Counted from the first letter of the stretch, positions 34,414 through 56,850 are shown. The stretch is DNA of 64,000 nucleotides from Trichoplax adhaerens (GCF_000150275.1 NW_002060968.1:229797-293796); one strand, 5' to 3'. Notes: generated from the sequence alone by a model not told the origin. A program made the numbers and translations.

Positions 34414-37400
34414 TCATGTTTTGGTAGAGCTAATCGCTAAAGCAATATCATTCCGACCTATTCGTCTCAAAGCTGTCTTCAGTCCATCAACATTAACATT
34501 TGGGCAATTTTTATTATACCAGATATCGAGAAATTTCATTACTTGATCGAAAACTCTACTTTCTTGAGCTTTGATTGTATCAACATCGATAAATGGGCCT
34601 AATATAGCAGCCAGTTTTGTCCAATCGATGCCAATTCTATCTGCAATTTCGAAAAAGCAATTCCTTGGATCTATAGAGTTACGGCAATATTGCAAATAAA
34701 TTAAGATGAAAAATGCTTAAACGAGAAATATTGCTAAATAGTACTTGTAATTAATATAAATAATGATTTGCCAATGTAAGAACTTTGCTATATATGTAGA
34801 ATTTAAAATATAAGATATAATAAGTTTGCATTGCATGCATATAGAGTACAAGAAATGGCTGGAAATATAGAAATACAATCAAATAAAGCAGATATAGATC
34901 AGCCGGCTAATTTTGCACCGAATATTATATCTACGCTGATACATTACGAGATCAAGCAATCATTAAACTGTATCTTTGGGATATAGCTTTGTTTTTATCT
35001 ATAGTAAAATATTTATACAAGTATAAATACTATATGTATTTTTATACTTAGTTCAGCTGCTTCTACAACAAATATTACATATTCCTTTCTTGTATTTAGT
35101 TGATAAAATATTGAATACATCATAGCAAGATGTTTATTTGATAAGTGTTACACTCACCATGTCTACTTGCCACTTTTTTCTTTTTACCGAAATTCCGATC
35201 ACGTATTGATTCTGATTTATGCGATCCTTTACGTTTACCAAAGCGATTGATATCTGATGTTTCTGCAAAATAGTTAGAGACTACTTCCGTCATCTTGTCA
35301 GCTAAGATAATAATCATTATTTTGAGAGATTACGCAGTTAATTTGAAGAGTAAATGCCGTAATCGATACTGTTAGAAAATAGATACTATTAACAAGATCG
35401 CGAATTCATCACTAAAGCAAGTAAATGTTATACCTATTGGAACATGGTATAATTTACTTTTATTTACTTTATTGCTAATTTACTTGACAAATACACTGTT
35501 TAAATTGAGATGCATTTTAACTTCTTCATTAAGTAATATCTAGTCTATATCTTTACCCACCGTATGTATTTGTTAATCTTTCCTTTCTAAGAAGCATCCA
35601 GTCACGTGTAGGCTTCGATTTAAAAAACTTCTCACATAAAACACAACGAATAATATCTACACTATCCGCGAAATAACTATCCACTATTTCTGTCATCTTA
35701 CTACATTCATTACATCTAACATAAAATCTACTTTGTGCTGATTTAAACTTTGGCATTCTTTCATTAATTGTCTCGTTTAGTTTATCTCTAATTATTATAT
35801 GTGGTTGTATCTTACTAATCCAACTACCGATATTATTCTCAATCCGAGACGCAATTTCTTTCGGATATTTCTGATAGCAATAGAGTAAGCTAATACGAGA
35901 TTCTTCTTTCTTAACAACAATCTGACATTGATAATCAGGTATGTAGTATTTAGCACATCGATAATAAACTTTTACTCTTGAGTTATTCCACACTTTTAAA
36001 CAAGCCGATAAAAGGCAATAAAATATACCGTCAGGAATATACGGTATAACTTTTTCGTCGTATCCAATGTATAGCCAATCTGATACACGATAATCTGTTA
36101 GATCTAACGTACCAACAGATGAATTAAGTAGATAAGGTATAAAATATTGCTGGTGACATTCTTTGTTATCAAGACTATCATGTTGATCCTCAATTTTACA
36201 GATAATATTATAACTATCCATTAATTGTAACACGAAATCTTTCTCTTTCTTTTTCAATTCGAAATCTACTACAATATTATCAATGTACGCTTCAGATATT
36301 TTTCCAGTCTGATAAGCTTGATTATAAGATTCTCTTACATTAGTGGCCTTATATTCGCGTTTATCGAGTTTAATAATCGATCGAAATATATTGAGTAGCC
36401 AATCGAGATTAGTTACAATCATTTCTTCTACGCCTTTTTTACGACAATATACAATATCGCCTATATCATGTAAGTATAATAACATACTACGCAATTTCTC
36501 ATCGTTTTCATATAACTCGCAATCTATAGCTAACTGCTTTACTTCTTCCAATGTCATAATATTATGAATTCTATTAATAATACGATTAAACTGTGTTGTT
36601 GATGCGGCTTGTCTGCTTATGTCATTAACTGATGTATGCAATATAGATGCCATAATATACCATCGAATCGGAATCGATTTTTTCATAAAAGGTAAACTAG
36701 ACACGATTCGCTTTATTAATTCATGTAACTGTAACGTAGTCTGTCGACGTTGCTCGATAGCCGCTGAAGATTTATCATCGGGATCGCAATGAAATATGAT
36801 GTCTGAAAAGCATATATTAGATTTATAGATAGGCATTGTTACAATAATAGAATTCTCAAACGCCTTAAATCTACGTTGACGCTCTTGACAATCTTGTATT
36901 TGATCGCCATGAGATGCTACTAAGATGACAACTGGTAAAGAATATTGTTGCAATTTACCATCAATTTCTACTTGGACAGTCTCATCGCCATCATGGCTAC
37001 CAATAATCGATGTAAGCCATTCTTGCATAGCATATCGATAAGTCATATTAGTTGGGTTTCCTTCTCTATCAATAACAAAGTCATCGAAATCACGAGTAAT
37101 ATTAAAAACTAAAATATAGATACTATTTCCAGATAGAAACGGACGATGCGTAACATGATAGACAGCTTGACCTCCGAAATCGACTAATTTACCATATTGA
37201 TTATCGTCATCTACTATTTCGCCTTTCATATCGATTATAGATCGCATAAAATCTTCGTACATTAAGATTTTGTGGATTTTTTGTGTTATTGAGACAGTAG
37301 ATACAAGGGTATCGATAGCCATAGGTCGATTATCGCTAATTACCGACTTTATTTTATCAGTGCTAATAAATGTGTCTGTTTCTATCGTCTGTATTTGACG

Positions 37401-40400
37401 ATCTACTTTACTAACTTGGATATCTGGGTTGATATTAGGTACAATATTCAGTTTTGTCTTGAATTTTTGTATAGCTGCTAACACTTTCCTATACAATACT
37501 ATCTGGAAGTGATAAATCTTCTTGTCTAAGATATTATATACAATAAGATTAACATATCTGCCGGTGTCGTCGATAATCTCAGTTTGGCTTACGCTAATAA
37601 TTATTCCTTGATTTGTAAATACGTTCATAATAGTCGTTTTACCCACACTTTCAGGACCGGCAAAGATAATTTTAGTAAAATCATTACGACATTGTCCATC
37701 TTGCAGCGCTTCATTATAAGCTTTAATGTATTCTTTATCATTGATAGCTAAATTAATATTAATTGATCAAATTATTAACCACAATAGGAATAGTTGTTAA
37801 TATACAGGATCAATATCTATCAACGACTAGGTTATGAGCGTAAATTAATTAAATTAAACTTCGTTTACGTAGTAAATAATAGTTTTTAAAAATAAATCTA
37901 TTCAAAGAAAATGGAAATTTAGCGATTTACAGTATTAATGAAATCAAATATTCAAGTTTGATCGCTGTATCATTAAGTAAACTATAGTTGCTATCAAGGT
38001 TGACAGTATTTTATGATAGATGAGAAGTAGAACAGCTCGTTAGTAATAAAAGTAGATAAAGATAATGCAGTATTTTCTTACCATCTGTATATGTGGAATT
38101 TTTACTTTTTAAATCCGTATTTGCGACTTTGAGGCTACCCTCTATTCATCAATTAATTATATATTAGTGAAGTCACATAAGTGATAGCTCGCAATTCAAA
38201 TTCTTGAGTAAGTCGTAGAGTTCAGCATTTACCTTGTAGTATTTTCATGGCATAACTCGATAATAATGGATTCGACTGAGCTTGTAGTAACATAGCGTTA
38301 AGATTCTCTATTATTTTATTCTGTTTTTGATTACAGAGACTGGCTATTAATATTATCAAATGGTCTTGCGATAAATTTCTCTCTAGCCAAAATCGTAACA
38401 TATTCGTAGCTAAAACCGAACTATGGCTTGCATAACGACATTGTTGCTCAAGATATTGGATATCATCATTAGAAATGCCCAAATGGATTGCCAAGTTTAT
38501 CCACTTATCTCCAATACCGTTTGCAATAGTAGAATAACATACCTCTATAGCGTAAAATACAAGAATATTTGGAATGGCTATTACAGCTATATTAAATAGT
38601 TAAAGATTATGTGTTTTGTACATTGTAATCAATTACTGTTCATTATCACACTATTAGTCTTAACAAACAGTTAGTGTTAATCGTTGTCGTTAGATATTTG
38701 ATTTTAGTACAAAAAATTTGCACGGGTGTAAACTCTAGTATTAATGTGTATATTTATAATAATTATTTAATGTCCCTTGATCCATTTTACTACCAATTAC
38801 TAACCATTGAACTTTTCTATTGCGGCTTTTTCTTCATCGATATACTTATTGGTCGAATTATCTTCAATTTCTATATCATTTTGGTCAAGTCCTACTGTAT
38901 AACATAATTGTAGCCTAAAATTATTTATTTGAATACATATCGGTAATTGTTTAGGATTATGAAATGTTAATCCTTGTATGGTTAAATTACCTTTACCATT
39001 TCAAACATTTTAAATGATACCGTTGTTGATATGTTGAAAATAATAGTACATTATTTCTTTATTATAACTTACTGACATATTAATTTACCAAAAGAATACT
39101 GATTAAAATATAATTTTAGATGTCTACTATATAACATACTTTCTGTTTATGGCATTAGATTGCATTAGTACAGGCTCTTTTTAGTCTTATAGCTTAATAA
39201 GAATGATCGACTAAACAGAGTTAAATCGCTATGCAGTGTAACGTTACATCGATATCTAATAAATAAACTGCTGCAACCTTGATCACTACTTTGCATTGAG
39301 TGTTGATCTTGATGTTCCTCGACTAGAAATAAAGAACAGAGTTAAGATTCTTATCAAAATTAGAGCAAACAGGTTATCAGTCCTGCTTGTAGGCAGAATT
39401 TTACCATCTAGTGCTACTTTCATGCTAATTTCGTTTAAAAAAATAAGTATTGTTACTTAGATAGCAGGTAAAATTTGCGTAAGTTATTTTCTTGTCAGAA
39501 ACGATCTACGATTACGAAAATTTGTTGTATTTAAATGATGTGATGTATAAAGTACAGTAGTAATTTGTACTAAAACTAGGACAGAAAATTGTAGTAAAGA
39601 TATTCTTCTTGATTTTACCAATGTTATCTTGTTTTGTTGTTAATTAATCATTATTTTATATATGCAAGAATATTCATTCAGTTTATATGAATACCGATTT
39701 CTAGGGTGTATTACTTTCTTAGAGTTTGTCATTTGAAAGAAAACTCTTTTATTGTGCTGAGTAGGTGATGGACTTTTAGCTCATTACTTCTCTTTTATGG
39801 GATATTCTGATGATAAACCCTTCAACGTTGAACTTGTTGTAATGTCGTCATGTCATAACACTAAACTTACGTACTATTTGAAATAAAATATAATGTCCAA
39901 TGGCAAAAATGCTTCATCGACTAATGTATGCTTGATTTAATATCGCTTAAATAAGTTATTAAAATTTTCTAGTTGGGTCAGTAATGTTGATGTCTAATTC
40001 TGTTTACTAATAATTGGAAATACAAGTTTTAGTTTTGAACTACACATGAGAAAATTCATAAATAGTAATTGGACTGTACCAATCTGTTCATAAATTGTCC
40101 TTCAACACGATTAATATTTTGGGCAGAAGAAACATTAGGAAAATCATGAACTAATTTGCAAAATTCAAGTTGATTTAGCTTATAAATTAAGGCTGTAAAG
40201 GAGTCAAAGACTTGTTGTATGGAAGTATTACGATATAGAATATCATTCCTAATTGGGCTAAATGAATTATATAATATAGAACTGCTGTCTATTAAAATTG
40301 AATGAATGAAGGATGGCTCTCTTTTCAATCCAAATGCTATGCTTTAAAATCATTACTGTTTATTATGAGAACGTAAACTGTTTATGTTACACTCATTAAT

Positions 40401-43400
40401 CATTAATTATAATATAATTGGAGTAGAACTAGGTATGGAGAGAAATATGAAGTTAATTGCTATCGATGACATTCATGCTACTACCGTATTCTAGCGACAG
40501 TAGTTGTTGATGGAAAGAAAGAACAAAAACATGAGTGTGGTATATTAGTGAGTTTGAATTTTCAGATCCGATTAAGGTTCAATTATTCGGTATGTTCCTT
40601 TTAACTTTAAAATGAGTGAAGTGGTCCAAGTAGATGCCGTATCTTAATAAAATTATTTCATAATTTTCATAATAAAGCAAGAATCAATAACCAGAAAATT
40701 CTATCGTCTCTCAGATTATAGCTAACTTGCCAATCAAAGTAATGAGTATAGCATTAGCCTTAACGATTAGTTTACTCAAACAAGCTATGTTTTATGTTAT
40801 TATTATGAAATGAGATTTTCGTTCGTTGTATCGATACAGTTTCTATATTCTAAGGTAACTATAACTTTAACTTATTCTGTTTGACTATAGTAGCACAGGA
40901 ATAAAATTTATAGTATGCACGTTAGTAGAAGAATTTATAGATGAAATAGTTGCCTGAATGCATTTCTTACAAGTTATCATTTGTTGTGCATTGTTTATCG
41001 GCAGTTATCTTATTTGCAAGAATGTTATCGTATTCGTTAGTATTTGTAATATGCCGTTAGCAAACCGTTAGCTTTGTTCAACTATATAACGGTACAGTTA
41101 TAGCTATAAAAGTTTAGTTCAATACTCTAGCTTTACTCGACTCTTGTAGAAGATTTCTAGCAAATCTTCCTTGTTACAAAGTAGAAGAGTTTCGGAAAAG
41201 TAACGGTTATGCTAACATTTTAATGAAATTGTTGATGTAAATTAGGTATTTATTGGAACGTAAAAGGTGAAAATATATTGGATGAAAAATTGTTCGAGTA
41301 GTGCTGAAATCAAGAAATTACCTGGTGATCGTGTAGAACGATGGATGACTGTTGGATTGATTGTAAGTTGCTGATGAAGAATATTGGCTATTTTTGATGC
41401 GACAATCTCATCCCCTTTTTCTTCCAATAACAGTAAATTATTACATTTATCAATTTCTTTCGTGGAATAGAGGATTTGAGGGTGATTTTCTTCATAGAGA
41501 TTGCGTAGACTATCGATGGATTTTCGATAGTATAAGATTGCTTGGAGATAATTAGACTGTCGGCGACAGACTGCGGCTAGTTTTTGATAACATTGCGCAG
41601 TCTGAGGATGATTCTCGCCTAATGTTACTAAATAAACTTGCAATGCCTTGTTATATAGAGATAGAGCATCATCGAGTTTTCTTTGCTTACAATAGGTAAA
41701 TCCAATATTAATATACGTTGAAGCAATATTTGGATGATTTTCGCCAAATTCTGCTAGATAAATCTTTAATGATTTGTTGTACATTAATAGAGCGTCTTCA
41801 CACTTGCCTTTTACCATATAGATAGCTCCAATATTGTTGTAGGTTGCAGCAATGCTTGGATGATTATCACCAAGTTGTGCTAGTTCAATTTGCAATGCAT
41901 TGTTAAGCATTAATAGAGCGTCATTATGCTTTTTTTGATGATCATAGACAGCTGCAATGTTGTTATATGTAGTAGCAATAGTCGGATGATTCTCACCAAG
42001 TTGTTGTAGTTGAATCTTAAGTGATTTGTTATGCATTAATAGAGCGTCATCATAATTTTTTTGGCTATCATAAACCAATCCAATTTTGTTATACGTTGAA
42101 GCAACTTTAGGATGATTATCACCTAATTGTGCTAGTTCGATCTTGAGCGATTTGTTATACAGTGATAGAGCATCCTCATATTTGCCTTGATTATAATAAA
42201 CAAGTCCCATGTTACCGTAGATGAAAGCAAGACTCGGATGATTTTCACCCTGTTTTGGTAGTTTAATTTTCAGTGATTCTTTCAATATAGATAGAGCGTC
42301 ATCGTACTTACTTTGCTTATTGTAGACTAGTGCAATGTTGTTATATGTTACAGCAACATTGAGATGATTTTCACCAAGCTGTGCTAGTTCTATCTTCAGT
42401 GATTTGTTATGCATTAATAAAGCATCGTTGTACTTGCCTTGTTCGTAATACACTTGTCCAATATTGCTATATGTAATGGCAATTTTGGGATGATTTTCAC
42501 CAAATTGGACTATTTCAATGTTTAATGATTTGTTATACATTAATACAGCGTCATTATATTTGCCCTGATGGTTGTAGATATTCGCAATTTTCTTATAGGT
42601 TGTAGCAACATAACGATGATTTTCACCAAGTTGTATTAATGTAATCTTGAGTGATTTGTTTAATATTGCTAGAGCGTCATTATACTTGCCTTGATTCGTA
42701 TAAACTTGTCCAATCTTGTCATATGCTTTAGCAATATTTGGATGATTCTCACCAAAATGCTTTAGTCGAATCCCGAGCGATGTGTTATACATTGCGAGAG
42801 CGTTATCGTACTTGCCTTGATCAATATAGACATCTCCAATGTTGCAATAGGTTATAGCAGTGTGCGGATGGTTGTCATCAAGCTGAACTATTTGAATTTT
42901 TAATGCTTTATGATGCATTGATAAAGCGTCCTCATACTTGCCTTGATTACTATAAACAAGTCCAATACTGCTATACATTACGGCAGTATTTGGATGTCTG
43001 TCACCAAATTTTGCTATTTGAATCTTCAATGATTTGTTATACATTGATAGTGCTGCATCATACTTGCCTTGATGATTATAAACTGCTCCAATGTTGCTAT
43101 ATGTTGTAGCAATAGCTGGATTATTGTCACCCAGCTGTGCTCGATCAATCTCCAATGATTTGTTATACATTAATAGAGCGTCATCATATTTGTCTTGCCT
43201 ACTATAGACTTGTGCAATGTTGTAGTATGCTAAAGCCATTTTTGGATGATGATCACCAAGTTGTTCTAATCGAATCTTCATTGATTTTTTATACATTGAT
43301 AGAGCCTCATCATACTTACTTTGTTCATAATAGATATCTCCAATGGAGTTATACGAGTAAGCGACATTGATATCTTGACTCCCTAAACAATTTAATTTCA

Positions 43401-43785
43401 TTTCAAGTGACTTATTAAATTCGGTTAAAGCTCCTTCGAAATCACCTTGCAATCGTTTAATGAAGCCCTGATGATCTAAACACTTTGAAATTTTCTCTTC
43501 ATTTTGTAGTTGCTTGGCTATTTTCTCTGCTTTCCTGCTCCATTCATCGATTTTTATTAATTCATGCAGATGTTCATAACATTTAGCTATATTAAGATAA
43601 ATATCACATTCAAGATGACGAAGACTATGATCGTTACTCTCGGATATCAATTGAATTTCGGTTGCAGCTTCCATGAAATAAGATAGCGCTTGTTTATAAT
43701 TGCCTTCTTTTCGACATTTCACACCCTTTTGGTTTATGGATTTGGCTTCGTTCAGGACATTCACACTAGTCGACGTACTCGCCAT
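34414..43785 (-). CDS. Roco gene A: TPR array (3 cap + 15 x 42-aa repeats) - death domain - Roc GTPase - COR - basic linker - death domain, ~1852 aa
   Basis: Exons 43785-41322, 39322-39278, 38894-38805, 38544-38233, 38141-38082, 37747-35561, 35301-35158 and 34670-34414 are all GT-AG and give one open frame of 5559 nt. P-loop KIIFAGPESVGKTT, G3 LVDFGGQ, G4 VILVASHGD; COR motifs PIRW, LLYLHDIGDIVY, WL. Death-domain signatures IGDKWINLAIHLGIS..I..L...ML.FW and IGIDWTKLAAILG...FLDIW...LKTALRRIGRND. Confidence 0.85.
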
Positions 43786-45199
43786 ATTTCAGTTTATAGC
43801 AGGACCGAAAGCATTTACTCTGATAAAATAGACAATAACACTCTACCAGAAACAAATTTTAATTGTAATAGCAGTACGAAAGATCAGTACAATCGCTTGT
43901 TTAAAGTTATTCAACTGTCAATATACCGTATATCGACATCAACGTAATTACCGCAATAAAGTCTAGGTAGCATTTTATTCTAGAGTTTGTATATATAGTA
44001 TTTTACATACATATAAAGATAAATGGAATTACACTACAACTTGACAACGAAATAGCCATCAATCTCTGAATTCTGTATCCTTCAATTAATCAGTAATTTT
44101 TATGATATGAAAATTACCTTCTGTAGTAATTGCAATAAGAGAAATAGAAAATAAAATTTTCCTTTACTATAGTAATTTAAATTACAAATACTGTATGATG
44201 TTATTTTCTAAGCGGGGATAATGGTGCTTTTGGTGAGATCTTTGTAAAGATTGTATATTTACTGCGGTATATCATCAAAGAAAGACCAAGAATAATTAAG
44301 ACTGTTGGATAAATATTATATAGTCTTTGTTGTACAGTAATCGTTATTGTGGAAAATGGATGCAAGATTATAAAAGTGAGGGCGACGTAATAGAGTCAGA
44401 TTGCTATAATACTGTTGACTATTCACATTCTCAGTTAATATCAAAAATCACTCAACCGTCTTAGTAAGAAAGGGATACTTTATTGTAGTTTATAATGGCC
44501 AAACTCCCTCCCAGAAAAATTCCCGGCTTTTATACCCTCGATAGCAGATTATACCATAGAGGGCCTGCAGAATCTACAGTAAGTCTTCCTAATGCTTGCA
44601 AGCCTTGATCATGCAGGTTCTTCCTTATAGTCCTAATATAGCTATTATATGTCATAGATACTGCACAAATCGTAGTAGCACCTTCTAAATGTTATTACAA
44701 GCAGTGGTATAATTCTGCAAGTCTAACCATAAAGGTTCTCCCTTATGTTCCTAAAATAGCTATTCTGTTTGCTGTGTTACAGTTGCTGCACTAATCTTAG
44801 CATTTTTAAAATGTGAGTTAAACTGACAGTTCAAGCAGAGGTATAAGTCTGTTTATACAGGCTGGATGTACTAGTATATGTAAAATTCGGTAGTTATGGT
44901 TGAGCAACATGTAAGCTATCGTAAGATAATGAAAGAATATCAGAACTGCTAAGATTATAGAAATCAATTCGACACATACTATAACAGTCGATGAAATGGA
45001 AAATGATTGATTTTAAGATATTGCGAAAGTTGTTGGCTTTATAGATAACTAAGTATGACAAAGTACATTAACATCTAGTGCCTGGCAATTGTAAGTAATA
45101 GTTAAGAATGAATCACAAATTGCTCATGTTCTAAAATACGCTAGTAATGCAATACAATCTCAATACACTATACTTGTTTATTAAAGTAAACCACATAAT

Positions 45200-46935
45200 T
45201 TTCATGCATCTGTTGGAATCATACCATTCTACGAATCTTTTCTTATCTAATCATAAATGTTGCCACATCCGTCTACATGTTGCATTTATTTACCTTTAGT
45301 ACTCGCTTTGCAATATATTTCACAGACCCTAAATGTAATACTAACTTAGTTGAATCAATTTTAGGGTATTTTTGTACTGATCAAAGTATTGAGAGATTTA
45401 CCTACCCTGAGAAACATCATCAAACTTGTTGATGGCCTTAAAAAAACGTTATGGAACAATTGACAGTGTTGTAATTTAGATTAAGATTGTTTACTCTATT
45501 TATTAGTTAGTATCGATCAACGATTACAGACTCTCTAGTATTAGAAGATTCCATGATTACAACCTTTATGAAAGAATCGAAGAAATTGTCTGTTAAATTG
45601 AAAATTCCGAGAGACCTCCTATCTGATCATTTAACCACATCATAAAAATTAAATTATTATGATAGCCCATTAACTCATGATACGTATGTACTGTAAGTGT
45701 AAGTCAGAAATTAAGATAATGATGGAAGTAAATTAATATTTTATTATTTTATGTATTAATAGTACCGTAGTGGTTTTACTAATATTAAAAATGTTGATTA
45801 GGGAAAAGAAATCGTACAAATGTGCTGATTAATATTCCATCAAGAAATAACTTCATCGAAGAAATGTCTTCAGAATTGATTTTGATAATTACCGTATTTG
45901 ACATTTCTCTATAGATGACACTCTTTTATTTTATAAGTACCAGGATGATGCACGATGCTTTACTAATTTGAAACTTCTCGTCATTTGTCAAAGATGCGTG
46001 CTCGTTTCAAGATTGCTGTGCTCTAGCTTAATTTTTATGACTGTCAATCATCGATGTTAATTATCCTTACATAGCTGCCCAAATGTTATATTAACTGGTT
46101 TTCTATCCTGGTCGATTACAACAATATCAATGGTATGAATGATATTAAATAGTGTAATAACATATAAATAATATTTCCAAATAGGAATAGACAATGTGAT
46201 CCATGATATAGTAGATGCTATTGACTTCCAGTGTTAGTTCAGTTTTCATAGCAGCTATCATCAACACTTATAATCTTGCTGTTTAGACTCTGTCTGATTT
46301 TGCATAAAACTTTCATAAATTACGATTGTATGATTCAATTTCGGTGTTCAATCTTCAGGTGGATCGATATTATTACTAATTAGGGTCTTTCAGTAGAAGA
46401 ATTTCTAAAAATATGTAAGATCTCGCTTACTTCACTTCACTTCAATTTGATCAGTTTGCTAGAATTTGCAAAACACCATCTTATCTCACAACAAGAATAG
46501 CCGAAGTTGTTTACGTCCTTTTCCAGTTCTTTTAACTTTCAGAACTAATAACCTGATTACCACCAAAGCAACGTCAGTTTCTTCGAACAGACAGATGGTT
46601 TCGTCCTCATTTTTGTTTAGTAAATGGCCTACCTACGCTAATTTGATTTTTAAACTATTCTGTCGCTTTAAACGCGTTTCGTGTTATCATATTTGGAAGT
46701 CAATTTTTGCCACGTTCAAAATATTGAAGTGATCAGATTTACCAACTTCTTAATATCTTTCACAAAGTATAATGTCAGTTTCACCAGAGGCGTGCTTAAT
46801 CTCTATACATGCACTCATAATAGATGTTGTATCAGCTATTTCATGATTAGCAACAACGATTTGGTGAAATCATTGCAGCATTTGACTAGCAGTAATAATT
46901 CATTTTAAGCTAATAAATATTCTTTATCATTGATA
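45200..46935 (-). pseudogene. Decayed Roc-COR exon (third paralog)
   Basis: The minus strand from 46935 reads INDKEYLLA*NELLLLVKCCNDFTK/IVVANHEIADTTSIM, versus intact INDKEYIKAYNEALQDGQCRNDFTKIIFAGPESVGKTTIM. About 46150-46035 reads LFNIIHTIDIVVIDQDRKPVNITF/AAM*G*LTSMIDSH, versus VFNITRDFDDFVIDREGNPTNMTYRYAMQEWLTSIIGSH. It has stops, frameshifts and a destroyed P-loop. The left boundary is approximate. Confidence 0.8.
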
Positions 46936-47496
46936 ATTAATGTTACAAAACACAGGTAAAGTTATTAAACAGGAACACTATAACGAATATCATGATATTA
47001 TCTAGACAAACATTTTATACGTATTTACTAGTAGCTTGCAGTACTCCGAGTATGTAGCAATTCTTAAGTAATTTTTTGGTTAGTAATGTTAGTACAAAAT
47101 TAATTATTACATATTGAGCAGTAAATATTGATAATTACTTATGCAGGATTAGTAACCTCTACATAATATTTAGACTGTATTAAGAAATTAGTATCTGTAT
47201 TATTAACTATTCTATCAAACCATGTATTCCGGTATGATGTTAATATCATATAGATGTTGTGCAATCACATATTACACTCAATGGTTGATATAGAAATTAC
47301 TAATGAAAAATTATGTTACTAAATTACTGTTGATGGTATTAAAATAGGGTATAAAAGTCGCGAAAATGTGCAAATGACTTTTAAGTTTTTGATTAACCAC
47401 AGACACAATTAATAATAGGTACTGTAATCAATTTTTGTTAAAAAATATAACAATTGTAGTGAAAAATGCTTTATAATATAGTAATATGTACCAATT

Positions 47497-50400
47497 CTAA
47501 GTAGAACTAATAGCCAAAACAATATCATTTCGACCTATTCGTTCTAAAGCTGCCTTAAGTTGATCAACATTAACATTTGGAAAATTTCTGTCATACCAAG
47601 TATCCAAAAATTTCATAGCTCGGTCGAAAATTCTATTATCTTGTTCTTTGATAACATCAACATCAATAGATCGATCTAATCTTGCAGCTAATCTCGTCCA
47701 ATCGAGACCGATTCTATTTGCAATTTGGAAGAAGTGATACTTGGAGTCTGTAGCATTACATTAACATTGTAAATAAATTACAATGAAAATAATGAAGCAA
47801 GGATATAGTTAAGTGAAACTTGTAATGATTTTAAAGTTATGATTTGTCAATACAAGAGCTTTGTTATATTTATCGATTACGAACTAGTAAATTTAGAATT
47901 GAACTGATGTACATTAAACACAAAAAATAGCCGGAAGCATGTGCAGACTGGTTGGCTAATGTTGCTACTGTTTTTGTTAAAGATGAAAATATTAAATAAC
48001 TTGTACTTTCTAATTTATTTCGATAGTTAAATTCATCTTAATGAAGTTCTAACTTTGTTTTTGTCTACTTTAAGATATAAACACGGGCACATCTATATCA
48101 GCTAGACGTTTATTACATATATCTTACACTCACCTTTTCTACTTGCCATTCTTTTCTTTTTATCAGCATTTCGATCATGTGTCAATTCTGATTTACACGA
48201 TCCTTTACGTTTTCCAAAGCGATTGATATCTGGTCTTTCTGCGAAATAATTATAGGACAGTTTTGTTACCTTGTCAGCTACGACAATTATTATTATTTAA
48301 AGAGATTACGCAGTTAATTTGAAGAGTAAATGCCGTAATCGATACTGTTAGAAAATAGATACTATTAACAAGATCGCGAATTCATCACTAAAGCAAGTAA
48401 ATGTTATACTTATTGGAACATGGTATAATTTACTTTTATTTACTTTATTGCTAATTTACTTGACAAATACACTATTTAAATTGAGATGCATTTTAGCTTC
48501 TTCATCAAGTAATATCTAGTCTATATCTTTACCCACCGTATGTATTTGTTAATCTTTCCTTTCTAAGAAGCATCCAGTCACGTGTAGGCTTCGATTTAAA
48601 AAATTTCTCACATAAAACACAACGAATAATATCTACACTATCCGCGAAATAACTATCCACTATTTCTGTCATCTTACTACATTCATTACATCTAACATAA
48701 AATCTGCTTTGTGCTGATTTAAACTTTGGCATTCTTTCATTAATTGTCTCGTTTAGTTTATCTCTAATTATTATATGTGGTTGTATCTTACTAATCCAAC
48801 TACCGATATTATTCTCAATCCTAGACGCAATTTCTTTCGGATATTTCTGATAGCAATAGAGTAAGCTAATACGAGATTCTTCTTTCTTAACAACAATCTG
48901 ACATTGATAATCAGGTATGTAGTATTTAGCACATCGATAATAAACTTTTACTCTTGAGTTATTCCACACTTTTAAACAAGCCGATAAAAGGCAATAAAAT
49001 ATACCGTCAGGAATATACGGTATAACTTTTTCGTCGTATCCAATGTATAGCCAATCTGATACACGATAATCTGTTAGATCTAACGTACCAACAGATGAAT
49101 TAAGTAGATAAGGTATAAAATATTGCTGGTGACATTCTTTGTTATCAAGACTATCATGTTGATCCTCAATTTTACAGATAATATTATAACTATCCATTAA
49201 TTGTAACACGAAATCTTTCTCTTTCTTTTTCAATTCGAAATCTACTACAATATTATCAATGTACGCTTCAGATATTTTTCCAGTCTGATAAGCTTGATTA
49301 TAAGATTCTCTTACATTAGCACTCTTATATTCGCGTTTATCGAGTTTAATAATCGATCGAAATATATTGAGTAGCCAATCGAGATTAGTTACAATCATTT
49401 CTTCTACGCCTTTTTTACGACAATATACAATATCGCCTATATCATGTAAGTATAATAACATACTACGCAATTTCTCATCGTTTTCATATAACTCGCAATC
49501 TATAGCTAACTGCTTTACTTCTTCCAATGTCATAATATTATGAATTCTATTAATAATACGATTAAACTGTGTTGTTGATGCGGCTTGTCTGCTTATGTCA
49601 TTAACTGATGTATGCAATATAGATGCCATAATATACCATCGAATCGGAATCGATTTTTTCATAAAAGGTAAACTAGACACGATTCGCTTTATTAATTCAT
49701 GTAACTGTAACGTAGTCTGTCGACGTTGCTCGATAGCCGCTGAAGATTTATCATCGGGATCGCAATGAAATATGATGTCTGAAAAGCATATATTAGATTT
49801 ATAGATAGGCATTGTTGCAATAATAGAATTCTCAAACGTCTTAAATCTACGTTGACGCTCTTGACAATCTTGTATTCGATCGCCATGAGATGCTACTAAG
49901 ATGACAACTGGTAAAGAATATTGTTGCAATTTACCATCAATTTCTACTTGGACAGTCTCATCGCCATCATGGCTACCAATAATCGATGTAAGCCATTCTT
50001 GCATAGCATATCGATAAGTCATATTAGTTGGGTTTCCTTCTCTATCAATAACAAAGTCATCGAAATCACGAGTAATATTAAAAACTAAAATATAGATACT
50101 ATTTCCAGATAGAAATGGACGATGCGTAACATGATAGACAGCTTGACCTCCGAAATCGACTAATTTACCATATTGATTATCGTCATCTACTATTTCGCCT
50201 TTCATATCGATTATAGATCGCATAAAATCTTCGTACATTAAGATTTTGTGGATTTTTTGTGTTATTGAGACAGTAGATACAAGAGTATCGATAGCCATAG
50301 GTCGATTATCGCTAATTACCGACTTTATTTTATCAGTGCTAATAAATGTGTCTGTTTCTATCGTCTGTATTTGACGATCTACTTTACTAACTTGGATATC

Positions 50401-53400
50401 TGGGTTGATATTAGGTACAATATTCAGTTTTGTCTTGAATTTTTGTATAGCTGCTAACACTTTCCTATACAATACTATCTGAAAGTGATAAATCTTCTTG
50501 TCTAAGATATTGTATACAATAAGATTAACATATCTTCCGGTGTCGTCGATAATCTCAGTTTGGCTTACGCTAATAATTATTCCTTGATTTGTAAATACGT
50601 TCATAATAGTCGTTTTACCCACACTTTCAGGACCGGCAAAGATAATTTTAGTAAAATCATTACGACATTGTCCATCTTGCAGCGCTTCATTATAAGCTTT
50701 AATGTATTCTTTATCATTGATAGCTAAATTAATATTAATTGATCAAATTATTAACCACGATAGAAATATTTCCCAAAGTATAGTATTATTATGACCTATA
50801 AACCGTAAATAGTAATAAAAGTAGAGAGAGAGAGTGTAGTTAAAATTTCCTCACCTTCAGTATATGTGGAATTTTCACTTTTCAAATCCGTGTTTTCAAT
50901 CTTGAGACTACCATCTATTTAATAATTAATTAGTGAATGTAAATAAAATCTTGCGACTCACATCATTCAATAAATTAATTAATGCAGCATTTACCCTGTA
51001 AAATTTTCATCACATAACTCGATAATAATGGATTCGATTGGGCTTTCAGTAAGATATCGTTAAGATTCTTTGTTATTTTGTATAGTTTTAGATTAAAGAG
51101 GCTGGTTATTAATATTACCAAGTGGTTTTGGGATAGATTTTTCTTAAGCCAAAAATGCAGTATTTTGATGGCTAAAACCGAACTAGGACTTGGATGATGA
51201 CATTGCTCGATATATTGGATATCATCATTAGAAATGCCTAAATCGATTGATAAGTTTATCCACTTGTCTCCAATTTCGTTCGCAATAGTCGAATAACATT
51301 TCTCTATAGTGGAAGTTACAACATAATCCAAAATGGGTATTACGGTAATGTTAAATAGTATATGTGATATAAATATATTTATTTACGGATTGAGTTTGTG
51401 TAGATCAGTAGTCGATTACTACATATTATGAATGCTATTAATTTTCACAAATGTTTACTGTTAATTATTATCATTAGACTTTGGTATTAATTTACAGTAT
51501 TATAAATGTTACTGATAATGCCTTTCGATCAATTTTACTATTAATTACTAACCGTTAAAAATTTCTATTGCCTCTTTTTCTTTGTTGATATCCACATTAG
51601 TCGAGTTATCTCCAGCTTTCTTGTCATTTTGTTCAAATTCTACTGTAATACATATTTGAAATTTTAAGCAAATTACTCCAACATATATATATTTCAGACT
51701 ATGAAATACGAACATATGCATGGTTGTTTTACTTGTGTATCATTTCGAACATATAAATGATAGCTGACGACTTGAAAATAGTAATATTGCTGTTATATCA
51801 TTACTATAACTCACTACTATACATTTATCAAGATGGTATTGACTTGAATTTTATTTCAAGATCATCCATTTTTACTGGCAAGAATTATTTTAAGTCTTAT
51901 ATTTTGGTATGAATGATTTAATAAACAGAGCTACATCATTATATTTTACAACGTTACATCGATATTCAATATATTGTATAGACTACCATAACCTTGATTA
52001 TTACTTTGCCTCGAGTGCTGTCCTTGGTATTTCAAATCTAGAGATAAAGATAAAGTATTATATCATAGTTCGAGCAACATATTAGAATAGTCTGACAGTT
52101 CTATTTCCAGACAAGATTTCTACTGATATTGTGCTACATTAACGTTCATTTTTTTGAATAACAAGTATTGTTAGCCAACTAGCTGGTAATATTTGATGTA
52201 AGTTATTTTCTGTGTCGGGTATGGTCTAAATTACTTGGATTTGTTTCGTTTAAGTGATATGGTGTATAACTTAATAATAAAAAATACATTGGAGAAGAAA
52301 ATTGTATTATAGATATTTTCCTAGTCTTTGCCCATGCTATTCTTATCTTGAATAATAATTATTTAAAACATGAACAGTTACAGTTACAGATGGAATCATA
52401 CTGACTCATTTTGTGTAAATGTCGATTTCTGCAACGTGATATTGCTTTAGTGTTTGTAGTATTGGAATGAAATCTCTTTATTATATTGAGTAAAGGGTGG
52501 AGTTCTAACAAAATTATTTCTTCTGTATGCAACAGTCTAAAAATAGTAGAATTTATTGCAATGTAATGATATTATGATACAAAAAATTGTATGGCTACTT
52601 GGAGTTAAACATAACGTTCATTGGCGAAAATATTCCACTAACTTATGTGTGTTGGATTTATTGCTGGTTAAATGAGCTATTTTAATTTATTAGTTGATCA
52701 GTAATATTGATGTCTAGTTACAAAAGAATAATTAGAAGATACAAGTTCTAATTTTAAATTACCAATAAGAAAATGAACGTACATTATTTGTACTAGACGA
52801 AGTTTTATTGGAAATATTTTCCCCCTTTATACTATTGACTTATAGGTCAGAAAGAAATCTACAGTATGCAAGAACACAAACCAATTTGCAATATTAAAAT
52901 TGTTTGGCTCGTAAATTGTTGATGTAGGGCGGCATTAACTTGTTGTATGGAAATATTACAAAGTATGTAGCATAATTCCTAATTGTATTATGAAAAGTAT
53001 AACAGGAATTGTTCTGTATAAAAATTGAATAAATGAATGATAGTTCTCTTGTTAACCCAAATATTATACTTGCCTGGATTAATCTATTTAAAAAAATTGA
53101 TTTCTTGTGTTGTACTCATGAGTCGCTAATTTAGCATGAGATTATTTGTGACCTATTCTAATAACTATAGTAACGGCTGCTGACAGAAGGCAAGTATATG
53201 AACGTAGCCTCTTAATTAGTTGGAATTATCGATTCTACTTATTGCTTAATCATTTGTCGTATTTCTATTTACTTCCGTATAGGTAGCTTTGGTCCAAGAC
53301 CATATCGCGTTTTGATAAACTGATTTCAATACTTTTATAATGCTGCAACAATCAGTAATAAAATATTTCTATCGTTACTCTGTTTTTACTATTAATTAGC

Positions 53401-55960
53401 CAATCGATTTAATGTGATATAAATAAAGCATTAAGTTTTATCGACTTGTCTACTCGAAGAAACTATGCTTAAAAATTATACTAGTACTTTAAATAAAATT
53501 ATTGAAATGGATTGATTATTCGTTTAATTTTGATGCATTAACAAGATTGAGCAAATAAGTTGGCTAGAACGATTATTCTACTAGTGAATTGAATTTTAAT
53601 GATGCGTAAACTTACTATGGCGCTGTGTGTTATCTTTTATTCCCGTTTGACTTTCTTGGCTATTTTCTTTATCTGGTGAAAATAGAAGGTGAATATGTAT
53701 TAAATAGATGATAAATGGCTAGATTAGAGCTTAAAATCTAGTAATCACCTGGTGATGTTGTGGAATCATGAACTACTGTTTGATTGACTACATGTTCTTG
53801 TAAGGGCTGATGAATAACTTTGGCTGTTTCTGATGTAACAGTTCCTTTCTCATTTTCGTGTAGTTGATTATTACATTCAGCAATTTGTTTGGCAACATGG
53901 AGGATTTGAGGGTGATTTTCTTCATAGACGTTGTGTAGGGAATCGATGGACTTTCGATAGAGTGAAATTGCTTGATGATAATTAGACTGTCGATGATCAA
54001 CTTGAGCTAGTTTTTCATAGCATTTGGCTGTATGAAGATGATTCTCACCTAGTGTTGCCAAAAGGACTTGCAATGACTTGCTATACATAAATCGAGCATC
54101 ATCGTATTTGCTTTGTTCAATATAGAGACTTCCAATGTTGATATATATTAAAGCAGTAGTTGGGTGATTGTTACCAAATTTTGTTAGATAAATCTTTAGT
54201 GATTTTTTTAACATTGATAGAGCATCTGTATGCTTATGTTGACTCTCATAGATTGCTGCAATGTTGTTATATGTTACTGCAATATTTGGATGATTGTCAT
54301 TAGATTGCGTTAATTGAATCTTCAGTGATTTGTTATATAGTAATAGAGCATCTTCAGACTTTCCTTGGCGATAATAAGCAGTGGCAATGTTGGCATATGT
54401 TGAAGCAATGCTTGGATGATTGTCGCCAAGTCGTGCTAATTCAATCTTGAGTGTTTTGTTATACATTAATAGAGCATCATTATATTTGCCTTGGTATTGA
54501 TAGACAGTTCCAATGCTGCCATACGTATTAGCAAGATCGGGACGATTACTATCATGTTGTGCTAGTTGAATCTTGAGTGATTTGTTCAGCATTGATAGAG
54601 CATCATTATACTTGCCTTGACCACTATAAATATCTCCAATTCTTTTATATGTAAAAGCAATACGAGGATGATTGCCACCAAGTTGTGATAATTGAATCTT
54701 GAGGGATTTGTTCAACATTGATAGAGCATCATCGTATTTGCTTTGCTTAGCATAGACACTTGCGATATTGCTACATGATATAGCAATGTCGGGATGATCA
54801 TCACCAAGTTGTGCTAGTTTAATCTTGAGTGATTTGTTAAACATTAATAAAGCGTCATTATGCTTGCCTTGTTTATAATAGATACTTGCAATATTGGAAT
54901 AGATTGCAGCATTTGAATGATTGCCATTAGGGTGTGCTACTGCAATCTGTAGTGATTTGTCGAACATTAAAAGAGCATCATCGAATTTGCCTTGCTGATA
55001 GTAGACACTTCCAATATTGCAATAGGTATTAGCAATTTCTGGATGATTGTCATCGCCTTGCATTAATTTAATCTTCAATGATTTCTTGTACATTGACAGG
55101 GCATCATTATGTTTGCCTTGATGCAGATAAACAACTCCAATGCTATTATACCTATTAGCAACATCAGGATGATTTTCACCAAGTTGTTCTATTTTAATCT
55201 TCAGCGATGCGTAATACATTGATAGAGCGTTATTATACTTGCCTTGATGACTGTAAGTATCGCCAAAGTTGCGGTATGTTAGAGCAAGACTTGGATGATT
55301 GTCACCAAGATGTACTAGTTGAATCTTTAGAGATTTATTAAGCATTGATAAAGCCTCATCGTGCTTGCTTTGAAGATTATAGGTTCTTGCAATGCTATCG
55401 TATGTTTGAGCAATATTTAGATGATCGTCACCAAATATTACTAATTGCATCTTTAACGATTTGTTAAACATTGATAGAGCCTCATCATGCTTTCTTTGAT
55501 CATTATAGACATCTCCAATTGCACGATAGGACTTACTTATAATGCTATGTTCATTTCCGAAGCATTTTAGTCTCATTTTAAGTGCTTTATTAATATCAAT
55601 CAAAGCTCCACTGTAATCGCCTTGTATCCGTTTAATAAGCCCCTGATTATTTAAACATGTTGAAATTTTCACTTCATCTTGTAGTTGCTTAGCTAATTCC
55701 TCTGCTTTTCTGTTCCATTTATCGGCTTTTACCAATTCATGTTGATGTAAATAACAATAAGTTATGTTGAGATAAATACTACATTCAAGTTGCTGATAAT
55801 CATTATCACTACTCTTGGATATCCATTGAATTTTAGTTACAGCTTCTATGAAATAGGATAGCGCTTGTTCATAGTTTTCTTCATCTCGAGATTTCTCACC
55901 ATTTTGATTCATGGATTTGATTTCGTCGAGGACAGTTGAATTAGTAGATAAACTAGTCAT
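47497..55960 (-). CDS. Roco gene B: TPR array (3 cap + 13 repeats) - death domain - Roc - COR - basic linker - death domain, ~1765 aa
   Basis: Exons 55960-53749, 52037-51993, 51642-51553, 51303-50995, 50914-50855, 50723-48537, 48277-48134 and 47747-47497 sit at splice positions homologous to gene A, with an open frame of 5298 nt. Terminal death domain DSKYHFFQIANRIGLDWTRLAARL...LKAALERIGRNDIVLAISST*. Confidence 0.85.
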
Positions 55961-56442
55961 ACTTCAGTCTATAGCAAGATTAAAAGCGTATAGCTTGATG
56001 AAATAGACAGCGATGCACTACTGAAGAGATTATACTTTTGATAGCTGCTCAAATGATAGAGTTCACATGCATTGCATCGCATGCAGGTTTAAAAGAAAAT
56101 AACATAACGTACTGTAATAAGAGAATAGGAATGAATGTTTTCTTTCACGATGGTCTCATTTGAACTACAAATAATGTTTAAATTTGTTATTATCCAAGTG
56201 GGGAATAATTATAACATTATTGGCGATTATGCATTCATCATATCATCAAGAATTACCAAGAATAATTAACGTTGTTGAAGAAATATTGTATATTCTCTGT
56301 TGTGCAGTAATCATTATCGGGGAAAATTGGTGCAAGACTATAGAAACGAGAGCGGCATAATTAAGTCAGATCGCTAAAATAAAGTAGAAAAAGTAGAAAG
56401 TGTGTAACGTTATACGGTTATTGAAAACAAGATAGGAATTAT

Positions 56443-56850
56443 TCGATAGAGTAAGATTGCTTGGTGATAATTAGACTGTCGGCGATAGACTGCGGCTAGT
56501 TTTTGATGACATTGCTTAATATAAGGATGATTCTCACCTAATATTGCTAAATAAACTTGCAATGCCTAGTATTAGATGGAAAGAGGATCATTGAATTTTC
56601 TGTGTCTGTAACAAGTTAATCCACTATTGACATACGTTCCAGCAATATTTGGATGATTGTTGCCAAATGCTGCTTGATAAATCTTGAATGATTTGTTATA
56701 CATTGATACAGTAGAGTGTCTTTACACTTGCCTTTTTTTCTGATAGATAGTTGCAATATTGTTGTATATTATAGCAATAATTGGATGGTTGTCACCAAGT
56801 TGCACTATTTCTAGCTGTAATGATTTGTTATGCATTGATAGATCGTCATC
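56443..56850 (-). pseudogene. Decayed TPR-array fragment (~3 repeats)
   Basis: Aligns by eye to the last repeats of gene A (~41525-41930), e.g. TTAGACTGTCGGCGA(C/T)AGACTGCGGCTAGTTTTTGAT, CAATATTTGGATGATT and ACACTTGCCTTTT. It has indels and stops and no start or flanking exons. Confidence 0.85.

What the first reader, a model, noticed from the sequence alone, without database searches (positions are those of the whole stretch)
34414..56850. Cluster of TPR-DD-Roc-COR-DD genes: candidate NLR-analogous immune or cell-death receptors with a GTPase switch
Seen: the separate ORFs in the track (TPR 847/740 aa, death domains, Roc-COR 697 aa) splice into two single, kinase-less proteins with matching 8-exon structure, accompanied by two pseudogenic fragments. 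Established: Roc-COR is the dimerising GTPase module of LRRK2, DAPK1 and MFHAS1; death domains recruit signalling adaptors; animal, plant and fungal NLRs use variable repeat sensor + NTPase switch + death-fold effector and evolve in birth-and-death clusters. I recall placozoan Roco expansions being noted in general terms but know of no functional characterisation. Inference: the TPR solenoid senses a ligand, Roc-COR changes oligomeric state, and two flanking death domains transmit the signal.
Basis: partly seen in the sequence, partly recalled or inferred. Interest (0 to 1): 0.9.

Follow-up and report, generated by a model that had tools for sequence, protein, structure and literature searches.

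The report
Two tandem placozoan TPR-Death-Roco genes
Two neighbouring Trichoplax genes each encode a large kinase-less protein (TPR repeats, death domain, Roc-COR GTPase, second death domain) belonging to an already published placozoan gene expansion; the genes are real, but an immune-receptor role is untested.

Summary
The core observation holds. Window 34414-43785 (gene A) and 47497-55960 (gene B) are tandem paralogues on the minus strand of a Trichoplax adhaerens scaffold. Each has a TPR exon, an internal death-domain exon, one Roc-COR exon and a terminal death-domain exon, joined by short phase-1 exons.

RNA-like contigs from two studies show GT-AG junctions that link every exon of B from a 57-nt mini-exon to the last death domain. 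They also show one junction of A.

Two details are wrong:
- B has nine exons, not eight. The observed junction is 53616^52037, not 53749^52037.
- I found only one pseudogene fragment (56443-56850).

The TPR-exon junction itself rests on frame logic and gene models, not on RNA.

Gene B is already annotated as TRIADDRAFT_61714, without the internal death domain. Gene A is split in the annotation (its Roc-COR part is TRIADDRAFT_61712).

The family (TPR/CARD/Death ROCO genes of Trichoplax) was published in 2014. The idea that Roc-COR "AP-GTPases" parallel STAND/NLR switches is also in print. This scan has met the family at other loci of this genome.

Function is inferred from domains only, so this is a new member of a known kind. 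New here: corrected gene models, a 2.45-kb gene-conversion tract over the Roc-COR exon, and at least 33 near-full-length Roc-COR loci.

The parts
41322..43785 (-). Gene A exon 1: N-terminal region plus about 16 units of a 42-aa KLC/NPHP3-type TPR (821 codons + 1 base)
   Evidence: ORF; Pfam TPR_12 E 2e-177; 42-aa register; donor CAG|GTAATT at 41322
39278..39322 (-). Gene A exon 2 (45 nt linker, phase 1)
   Evidence: Homologous to B exon 52037-51993, whose acceptor is seen in RNA-like contigs. The junction with A exon 1 is inferred only.
38805..38894 (-). Gene A exon 3 (90 nt acidic linker)
   Evidence: homologous to RNA-supported B exon 51642-51553
38233..38544 (-). Gene A exon 4: internal death domain (DD1)
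   Evidence: Pfam Death 37.3 bits vs cut-off 22.6; present in H2 models of paralogues
38082..38141 (-). Gene A exon 5 (60 nt linker)
35561..37747 (-). Gene A exon 6: Roc GTPase (about 37685-36696, with a disordered insertion), COR-A (about 36695-36126), COR-B (about 36125-35742), C4 zinc-ribbon-like tail (about 35741-35601)
   Evidence: Pfam Roc and COR-A above cut-off; profile hit to C. tepidum Roco 3dpu, E 6.5e-10; AF2 pLDDT 77.7, pTM 0.80; Foldseek top hits LRRK1, CtRoco and LRRK2 at E about 1e-15; G1 GPESVGKT, G3 DFGG, G4 SHGD
35158..35262 (-). Gene A exon 7 (105 nt basic linker)
   Evidence: X8 contig joins it to the Roc-COR exon; its loose end matches 35162-35191
34414..34670 (-). Gene A exon 8: C-terminal death domain (DD2) and stop
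   Evidence: Pfam Death 46.6 bits; frame
53749..55960 (-). Gene B exon 1: about 14 TPR units (737 codons + 1 base)
   Evidence: equals residues 1-737 of TRIADDRAFT_61714
53616..53672 (-).
   Evidence: RNA-like contigs join 53616 to 52037. The acceptor at 53672 comes from the JGI/H2 models and the frame. No homologue in A.
51993..52037 (-). Gene B exon 2
   Evidence: Joints and loose ends in X4
51553..51642 (-). Gene B exon 3
   Evidence: X4 record 14 and loose ends
50995..51303 (-). Gene B exon 4: internal death domain, skipped by the JGI and H2 gene models
   Evidence: X4 joints 51553|51303 and 50995|50914; Pfam Death 25.7 bits; missing from P0151 and P0165
50855..50914 (-). Gene B exon 5
   Evidence: X4 joints
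48537..50723 (-). Gene B exon 6: Roc-COR plus C4 tail, 99.3% aa identical to A's
48134..48238 (-). Gene B exon 7
   Evidence: Joint 48537|48238 in a contig of X4 lying on B; the X8 contig at this joint is gene A's; the JGI model uses a longer acceptor at 48278
47497..47747 (-). Gene B exon 8: C-terminal death domain and stop
   Evidence: X4 loose end at 48134 matches 47718-47747 exactly; Pfam Death 52.1 bits
35320..37790 (.). Near-identical tract (98-100% to 48296-50766) covering the Roc-COR exon and intron edges; flanks are 64-81% identical
   Evidence: dS is 0.021 in exon 6 against 0.57-0.89 in exons 1, 3, 4, 5 and 8. DNA-like run X1 has about twice the depth there.
56443..56850 (-). TPR pseudogene fragment upstream of gene B (about 3 repeats, 3 in-frame stops)

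Best explanation
These are two intact, tandemly duplicated members of the published placozoan ROCO (Roc-COR, 'AP-GTPase') expansion. Spliced RNA-like contigs are seen for both. Each gene encodes one protein of roughly 1800 aa with no kinase domain or other effector detected. Its order is: 14-16 KLC/NPHP3-type TPRs, a linker, a death domain, a Roc GTPase with an internal disordered insertion, COR-A/COR-B, a C4 zinc-ribbon-like tail, a basic linker and a second death domain. Shown here: the gene structure, the domain identities, the Roc-COR fold, conserved nucleotide-binding motifs, purifying selection, and recent gene conversion of the Roc-COR exon. Inferred: the protein acts as a GTP-gated scaffold. 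The variable TPR array would bind a partner or ligand, the Roc-COR module would change conformation or oligomeric state as in bacterial Roco and LRRK proteins, and the death domains would recruit other death-fold proteins by homotypic contacts. On this reading its logic parallels DAPK1 and NLR/Apaf-1-type switches. I put the gene and domain claims at about 0.9 and the cell-death or immune signalling role at about 0.35.
For: Domains are above Pfam cut-offs. A profile of 22 paralogous exons hits C. tepidum Roco, M. barkeri Roco2 and LRRK2 Roc. The AF2 model has pTM 0.80 and its top 36 Foldseek hits are all Roc-COR structures. G1, G3 and G4 motifs are kept across paralogues. RNA-like contigs carry seven GT-AG junctions in B and one in A. 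Frames are open through all exons. dN/dS is 0.10-0.50 in seven of the eight exons compared; the 34-codon exon 7 gives 0.90. Gene B is TRIADDRAFT_61714. Models of H2 paralogues show TPR-Death-Roc-COR(-Death). The family is large and clustered and includes broken copies: 73 matches, about 33 near-full-length. Roc-COR is also fused to NB-ARC/APAF1_C in TRIADDRAFT_62071, and an amphioxus relative is DED-Death-Roc-COR, which links the module to death-fold and apoptosis machinery. The general switch concept is published.
Against: No functional, expression-induction or interaction data exist for these genes; a search for their identifiers found no paper. RNA was not seen to join the TPR exon to the rest. 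The runs are only guessed to be RNA, and the contigs are short. Overall TPR dN/dS is 0.50, so there is no sign of positive selection at that resolution. The sensor-first domain order, with a death domain on each side of the GTPase, differs from NLRs.
Confidence: 0.6

Rival explanations
1. Same genes and same protein, but an ordinary intracellular signalling scaffold of the DAPK1/MFHAS1/LRRK type (cytoskeleton, trafficking, feeding, chemotaxis or developmental apoptosis control), not a receptor for non-self.
For: Characterised animal ROCO proteins mostly act in such pathways. Civiero et al. 2014 suggested chemotaxis or phagocytosis roles for the placozoan expansion. TPR dN/dS of 0.50 shows no positive selection overall. 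The Kamm et al. 2019 placozoan immunity survey does not list Roco genes.
Against: The family has dozens of clustered paralogues, pseudogenes and varying repeat numbers, and it is fused to NB-ARC and flanked by death-fold domains. That pattern is more typical of conflict or immune families than of housekeeping scaffolds.
Confidence: 0.3
2. The TPR ORF is a separate gene that ends at its read-through stop. The DD-Roc-COR-DD part is a second gene with its own start, as gene A's Roc-COR part is annotated on its own in the JGI set (TRIADDRAFT_61712).
For: No RNA contig was shown crossing the TPR-exon donor in either gene. A search with the last 150 residues of A's TPR exon found no protein of 82-262 aa.
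Against: B exons E1b, E2 and E3 are open, phase-1 symmetric and contain no ATG, so they must continue an upstream coding exon. Donors at 41322 and 53749 are canonical and in frame. The JGI model for B, and H2 models for B and for A (a 1165-aa model that starts at A's ATG and runs into Roc-COR), join them. Many H2 paralogue models are TPR-Roc-COR fusions.
Confidence: 0.05
3. One or both copies are decaying duplicates without function, and the near-identical tract is an assembly artefact.
For: The family contains many broken copies. A TPR pseudogene fragment sits next door. The H2 assembly is broken at the tract.
Against: All 17 exons are open. dN/dS is below 1. Spliced contigs exist for both copies. 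DNA-like contigs show about twice the depth in the tract, as expected for two real copies. The H2 contigs are colinear with both copies at 98.7-99.3%.
Confidence: 0.05

Closest known systems
T. adhaerens ROCO expansion (Civiero et al. 2014, PMC4104024); gene B is TRIADDRAFT_61714 and gene A's Roc-COR part is TRIADDRAFT_61712
   Same: Same organism, same family, and for gene B the same gene: Roc-COR surrounded by TPR and death domains.
   Different: The paper lists at least 17 genes from JGI models. Here about 33 near-full-length Roc-COR exons are seen. The internal death-domain exon is missing from the JGI and H2 models but present in RNA-like contigs. Gene A is not annotated as one gene in the JGI set.
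DAPK1 (kinase-CaM-ANK-Roc-COR-Death)
   Same: A repeat array N-terminal to Roc-COR and a C-terminal death domain; a cell-death link through the death domain.
   Different: No kinase or calmodulin-binding region. TPR replaces ankyrin. There is an extra death domain between the repeats and Roc, and a C4 tail after COR. Sequence identity is too low for orthology: PDB hits are only to the switch II and COR-A segments.
Bacterial Roco (C. tepidum LRR-Roc-COR; 3dpu, 6hlu, 8r4b), MFHAS1, and the Roc-COR cores of LRRK1/LRRK2
   Same: Best sequence-profile and fold matches. The architecture is also repeat, Roc, COR without a kinase in CtRoco and MFHAS1.
   Different: TPR replaces LRR. Death domains are added. 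About 12-14% identity in the structural alignments. The Roc domain carries a disordered insertion of about 50 aa.
NLR / Apaf-1-type STAND receptors, including the placozoan NB-ARC-TPR/WD40 set (Kamm et al. 2019, PMC6321704)
   Same: The logic of repeat sensor, NTP switch and death-fold domain. The same TPR_10/TPR_12 repeat type. Clustered, expanding families. One Trichoplax protein even fuses NB-ARC to Roc-COR.
   Different: The switch is a Ras-like GTPase with COR, not a STAND ATPase. The domain order is sensor first. No NACHT or NB-ARC hit in these genes. It is an analogue, not a member.
Brown-algal LRR-ROCO candidate immune receptors (PMC3341825, PMC11378527) and prokaryotic AP-GTPase conflict systems (PMC8195603)
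   Same: ROCO families proposed as immune or conflict switches with variable repeat arrays, and lineage-specific expansions.
   Different: Those use LRRs and other effectors. Brown-algal diversity comes from shuffling of 72-bp LRR exons, whereas here the whole TPR array is one exon.
Amphioxus DED-Death-Roc-COR protein (BRAFLDRAFT_75746)
   Same: Death-fold domains fused to Roc-COR in another animal.
   Different: No TPR array. The death-fold domains are all N-terminal. About 29% identity over part of the Roc-COR exon (residues 303-580).

Membership tests
ROCO (Roc-COR GTPases) | Ras-like Roc G domain with nucleotide-binding motifs | tested here: met
   Pfam Roc 31.3 bits vs cut-off 27 on the whole exon. 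G1 GPESVGKT, G3 DFGG(Q/H) and G4 (S/T)H(G/A)D are conserved in paralogues. The fold matches LRRK1, LRRK2 and CtRoco.
ROCO (Roc-COR GTPases) | COR domain directly C-terminal to Roc in the same polypeptide | tested here: met
   Pfam COR-A 45.9 bits vs 35.3. The profile aligns to CtRoco COR. Foldseek E is about 1e-15 over about 750 columns.
ROCO (Roc-COR GTPases) | GTP binding and hydrolysis, and nucleotide-dependent dimer/monomer cycle through COR | not testable with these tools
   Needs purified protein. Only motif conservation can be shown here.
Death domain superfamily (PF00531) | Death-domain profile match above the curated cut-off | tested here: met
   A DD1 37.3, B DD1 25.7, A DD2 46.6 and B DD2 52.1 bits, all above the 22.6 cut-off.
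KLC/NPHP3-type TPR arrays (TPR_12/TPR_10) | Tandem 42-aa TPR units | tested here: met
   TPR_12 E 2e-177 (A) and 7e-143 (B). A strict 42-aa register with about 16 units in A and about 14 in B.
NLR / STAND NTPases | NACHT or NB-ARC (STAND) nucleotide-binding domain | tested here: not met
   No STAND family among the Pfam hits of any ORF or exon scanned (TPR, death-domain and Roc-COR exons); the short linker exons E1b, E2, E3, E5 and E7 were not scanned. The switch is Roc-COR.
DAPK1 / LRRK orthologues | Protein kinase domain (plus ANK for DAPK1, LRR/WD40 for LRRK) | tested here: not met
   No kinase, ANK, LRR or WD40 hit in any ORF or exon scanned; the short linker exons were not scanned. No intronic ORF scanned has a Pfam hit.

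The most novel reading that the evidence does not exclude
The dual-death-domain TPR-Roco proteins are true cytosolic receptors. Ligand binding on the TPR array would release a GTP-dependent change in Roc-COR that exposes both death domains and nucleates a death-fold signalling assembly. That would be an animal immune or cell-death receptor class built on a Ras-like GTPase instead of a STAND ATPase. In it the switch exon is kept uniform by gene conversion while the sensor and adaptor exons diverge.
Probability: 0.2. Interest if true: 0.75.

Novelty: new member of a known kind. Interest (0 to 1): 0.35.

Why it matters
If these proteins do act as receptors, placozoans would carry a second NLR-like system, with dozens of paralogues, that runs on a GTPase switch. 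That bears on how often the sensor-switch-death-fold design has arisen in early animals.

As things stand, the value is practical:
- Corrected gene models for TRIADDRAFT_61714 and TRIADDRAFT_61712, including an internal death domain that public models omit.
- A clear case of exon-limited gene conversion.
- A warning that the H2 sister-lineage model RDD37154.1 is an assembly chimera.

Tried and rejected
- **Single-sequence PDB search:** the Roc-COR exon gave only one weak hit (4wnr, E 4.6e-4). A profile of 22 paralogues was needed.
- **Search with the last 150 aa of A's TPR exon** (to find transcript-derived proteins crossing 41322^39322): nothing found.
- **Search with the whole TPR exon of A:** swamped by bacterial and metagenomic TPR proteins, many with CHAT or NB-ARC. 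It did not return A's own model.
- **Exact look-up of the two TPR ORFs as proteins:** not in the collection.
- **Homodimer prediction for COR plus tail (residues 375-728, two copies):** no verdict, so it counts neither for nor against.
- **Homologue of B's 57-nt exon in A's first intron:** none. Only chance 7-10-mers matched, and 23 frame-compatible cryptic AG..GT candidates carry no support.
- **Second pseudogene fragment:** none found with 55 family proteins at E <= 1e-4. ORFs 40059-40343 and 57598-57879 have no Pfam hit.
- **Paper search for the gene identifiers:** no paper.
- **Joined spliced proteins:** never built, searched or folded. All searches were exon by exon by reference. Frame continuity was checked by phase arithmetic and per-exon translation only.


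Full report
**Where this is.** The window is G000:C1389:229797-293796 of a 105.6-Mb, 1414-contig genome. Proteins that match it exactly are T. adhaerens models, and the sister lineage Trichoplax sp. H2 matches at 98.7-99.3%. Base composition is about 30% G+C.

- The 847-aa and 740-aa ORFs are dense TPR_12/TPR_10/NPHP3-type arrays in a strict 42-aa register, with about 16 units in A and about 14 in B.
- The two 697-aa ORFs carry Roc and COR-A. Four short ORFs are death domains.
- Taken as whole exons, all four Death hits and both Roc and COR-A exceed Pfam's curated cut-offs.
- The two gene bodies are colinear paralogues.

**Gene models.** Tblastx between the copies and splice-site reading gave an exon set for each gene.
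- Gene A has 8 exons: 43785-41322, 39322-39278, 38894-38805, 38544-38233, 38141-38082, 37747-35561, 35262-35158 and 34670-34414. That is 5520 nt, or 1839 aa.
- Gene B has 9 exons: 55960-53749, 53672-53616, 52037-51993, 51642-51553, 51303-50995, 50914-50855, 50723-48537, 48238-48134 and 47747-47497. That is 5316 nt, or 1771 aa.
- Every intron is GT..AG and phase 1, and no exon has an internal stop.
- I did not build, search or fold the joined proteins. All searches were exon by exon.

**Transcript evidence.** One call of read laying on 47811-53810 used Logan contigs of four runs.
- X1 behaves as DNA: it covers everything and shows no joints.
- X4 behaves as clean RNA. Its depth in the intron bins is fully explained by the exon pieces alone.
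- X4 gives joints 53616|52037 (two allelic contigs), 51553|51303, 50995|50914, 50855|50723 and 48537|48238.
- Loose ends that I matched back to the window give 51993|51642 and 48134|47747.
- So B's exons from the 57-nt mini-exon through the last death domain are chained pairwise by spliced contigs.
- X8 comes from another study. It has a contig whose exon-7 part carries 10 mismatches to B and whose loose end matches 35162-35191 exactly. This is gene A's Roc-COR to exon-7 splice, so a spliced gene-A contig is present in that run.

The acceptor at 52037 is fed by the donor at 53616.
- The mini-exon has no acceptor and no homologue in A. The two genes therefore differ in exon number.
- The junction out of the TPR exon was not observed in either gene. 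The X4 contigs stop at 53674, which is exactly 30 nt from an allelic difference at 53644. That is where a k=31 graph bubble would end, so the break says nothing about splicing.

**Why I still hold the single-gene model.**
- B's exons E1b to E3 are open, phase-symmetric and contain no ATG.
- The donors are canonical and in frame.
- JGI model TRIADDRAFT_61714 (P0151, 1681 aa) and H2 model RDD37154.1 (P0165) both use E1, then E1b, then E2.
- The H2 annotation has a 1165-aa model that starts at A's ATG and runs into the Roc-COR exon.
- Numerous H2 paralogue models are TPR-(Death)-Roc-COR-(Death) fusions.

**Annotation corrections.**
- Both P0151 and P0165 skip the internal death-domain exon that X4 includes, and P0151 uses a longer exon-7 acceptor (48278). 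The arithmetic reproduces 1681 aa exactly without that exon.
- Gene A's Roc-COR part is annotated alone as TRIADDRAFT_61712 (P0164, 876 aa), with odd 5' exons and no terminal death domain.
- P0165 is a chimera. Its first part is gene B and its last two exons are gene A's. H2 contig NOWV01000269.1 jumps from window 48100 to 37792 across the shared tract, while the intervening 11.4 kb sits on contig NOWV01000496.1.

**The Roc-COR exon.**
- A single-sequence PDB search was nearly blank.
- An alignment of 22 paralogous exons from this genome gave profile hits to C. tepidum Roco (E 6.5e-10, in both the switch II and COR-A segments), M. barkeri Roco2 and LRRK2 Roc.
- The AlphaFold2 model has pLDDT 77.7 and pTM 0.80. 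Its 36 best PDB matches are all LRRK1, LRRK2, CtRoco or MbRoco (best E 1.7e-15).
- Motifs G1 (GPESVGKT), G3 (DFGG followed by Q or H) and G4 ((S/T)H(G/A)D, with H as in LRRK2) are kept.
- Family-specific features are a poorly conserved segment between switch I and beta-3 that is disordered in the model (residues 103-150), and four invariant or near-invariant cysteines after COR-B that form hairpins like a zinc ribbon.

**Evolution of the pair.**
- Identity is 98-100% from about 37790 to 35320 (equivalent to 50766 to 48296). This covers the Roc-COR exon, about 40 nt of upstream intron and about 240 nt of downstream intron. It drops to 64-81% on both sides.
- dS is 0.021 in that exon, against 0.57-0.89 in the TPR exon, both death-domain exons and linker exons 3 and 5. 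This is recent gene conversion or unequal exchange limited to the switch exon.
- DNA-like contigs have about twice the depth there, and H2 shows both copies, so it is not an assembly duplication.
- dN/dS is 0.50 for the TPR exon, 0.23-0.26 for the death domains and 0.16 for Roc-COR. Both genes are under constraint, and there is no overall signal of positive selection.
- One TPR fragment with three stops lies upstream of B. No second fragment was found.

**Family census.**
- The Roc-COR exon has 73 matches in the genome. About 33 cover at least 500 residues, 31 of them without stops. At least 14 shorter matches carry stops. Many lie in clusters on C1404, C1392, C1372, C1368 and C1414.
- DD2-type exons number 48, and about a dozen lie directly downstream of a Roc-COR exon.
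- The internal DD1-type exon has only 10 matches. The two-death-domain layout therefore marks a small subclade.
- Outside placozoans, the six relatives I looked up (24-29% identity) are a coral (Montipora) protein, two amphioxus proteins (one DED-Death-Roc-COR), a labyrinthulomycete LRRK-like protein and an unnamed Logan-run protein; five of the ten hits looked up were still Trichoplax sp. H2 proteins.

**What is already known.**
- Civiero et al. 2014 (PMC4104024) reported at least 17 T. adhaerens ROCO genes with CARD, death, TPR, LRR and AAA domains, and speculated on chemotaxis or phagocytosis. Teng et al. 2024 (PMC11378527) repeat this.
- Kaur et al. 2020 and 2021 (PMC7159879, PMC8195603) treat AP-GTPases with COR as switches parallel to STAND NTPases in apoptosis and conflict systems, coupled to LRR, WD or TPR repeats.
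- Kamm et al. 2019 (PMC6321704) survey placozoan immunity without mentioning Roco.
- No paper names these two genes.
- Earlier notes of this scan describe the same family at other loci of this genome, and follow-up agents also judged it published.

**Verdict.** The genes and their architecture are real, and the models given here improve on the public ones. The NLR-like reading is a reasonable analogy that others have already drawn for this GTPase class, and nothing here tests it. The proteins are ROCO members and not NLRs. This is a new member of a known kind, of modest interest.

Noticed in passing
window 35320-37790 vs 48296-50766: A sharp-edged, 98-100% identical tract limited to the Roc-COR exon and its intron edges. 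The rest of the two genes is 64-81% identical. dS is 0.021 in the tract against 0.57-0.89 in exons 1, 3, 4, 5 and 8, which points to recent gene conversion.
   Followed up: yes
L021 (H2 contig NOWV01000269.1) and L022 (NOWV01000496.1): The H2 assembly is broken at that tract. As a result, H2 protein RDD37154.1 joins gene B's exons 1-6 to gene A's exons 7-8. The missing 11.4 kb is a separate contig.
   Followed up: yes
window 50995-51303 (B) and 38233-38544 (A): The internal death-domain exon is skipped in both public models of gene B (JGI TRIADDRAFT_61714 and H2 RDD37154.1), but the RNA-like contigs include it.
   Followed up: yes
window 35601-35741 and 48577-48717: Four invariant or near-invariant cysteines (CxxC ... 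CxxC) after COR-B in all 22 aligned paralogues. The model shows them as paired hairpins like a zinc ribbon. I know of no description of this in other ROCO proteins.
   Followed up: partly
window about 37296-37439 (residues 103-150 of the exon): A poorly conserved, disordered insertion inside the Roc G domain, between the P-loop/switch I part and the DFGG strand.
   Followed up: partly
G000:C1383:394768-396432 (P0004, TRIADDRAFT_62071): A paralogue whose gene model fuses NB-ARC and the APAF-1 helical domain to Roc-COR, putting a STAND ATPase and a Roc GTPase in one predicted protein.
   Followed up: no
G000:C1402:583305-583556, C1402:1487770-1488021, C1207:7275-7526: Death-domain exons that are 65-68% identical to gene A's terminal death domain, as close as gene B's (69%), yet have no Roc-COR match nearby. 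This suggests the tail exon moves between gene families.
   Followed up: no
window 52890-53081: A contig of run X7 lies inside gene B's long intron. The stretch is low-copy (itself, gene A's intron at 73%, and one locus on C1410 at 68%) and is unexplained. X7 also holds an unspliced piece of gene A, so it may contain pre-mRNA or DNA.
   Followed up: partly
window 14609-15751 (+): An intronless 380-aa rhodopsin-family GPCR ORF (7tm_1, E 3e-46).
   Followed up: no
window 44269-44411 and 56240-56381: A 143-nt stretch, 80% identical, lies about 300-600 nt upstream of both start codons. It may be shared promoter or 5' UTR sequence of the duplication unit.
   Followed up: no
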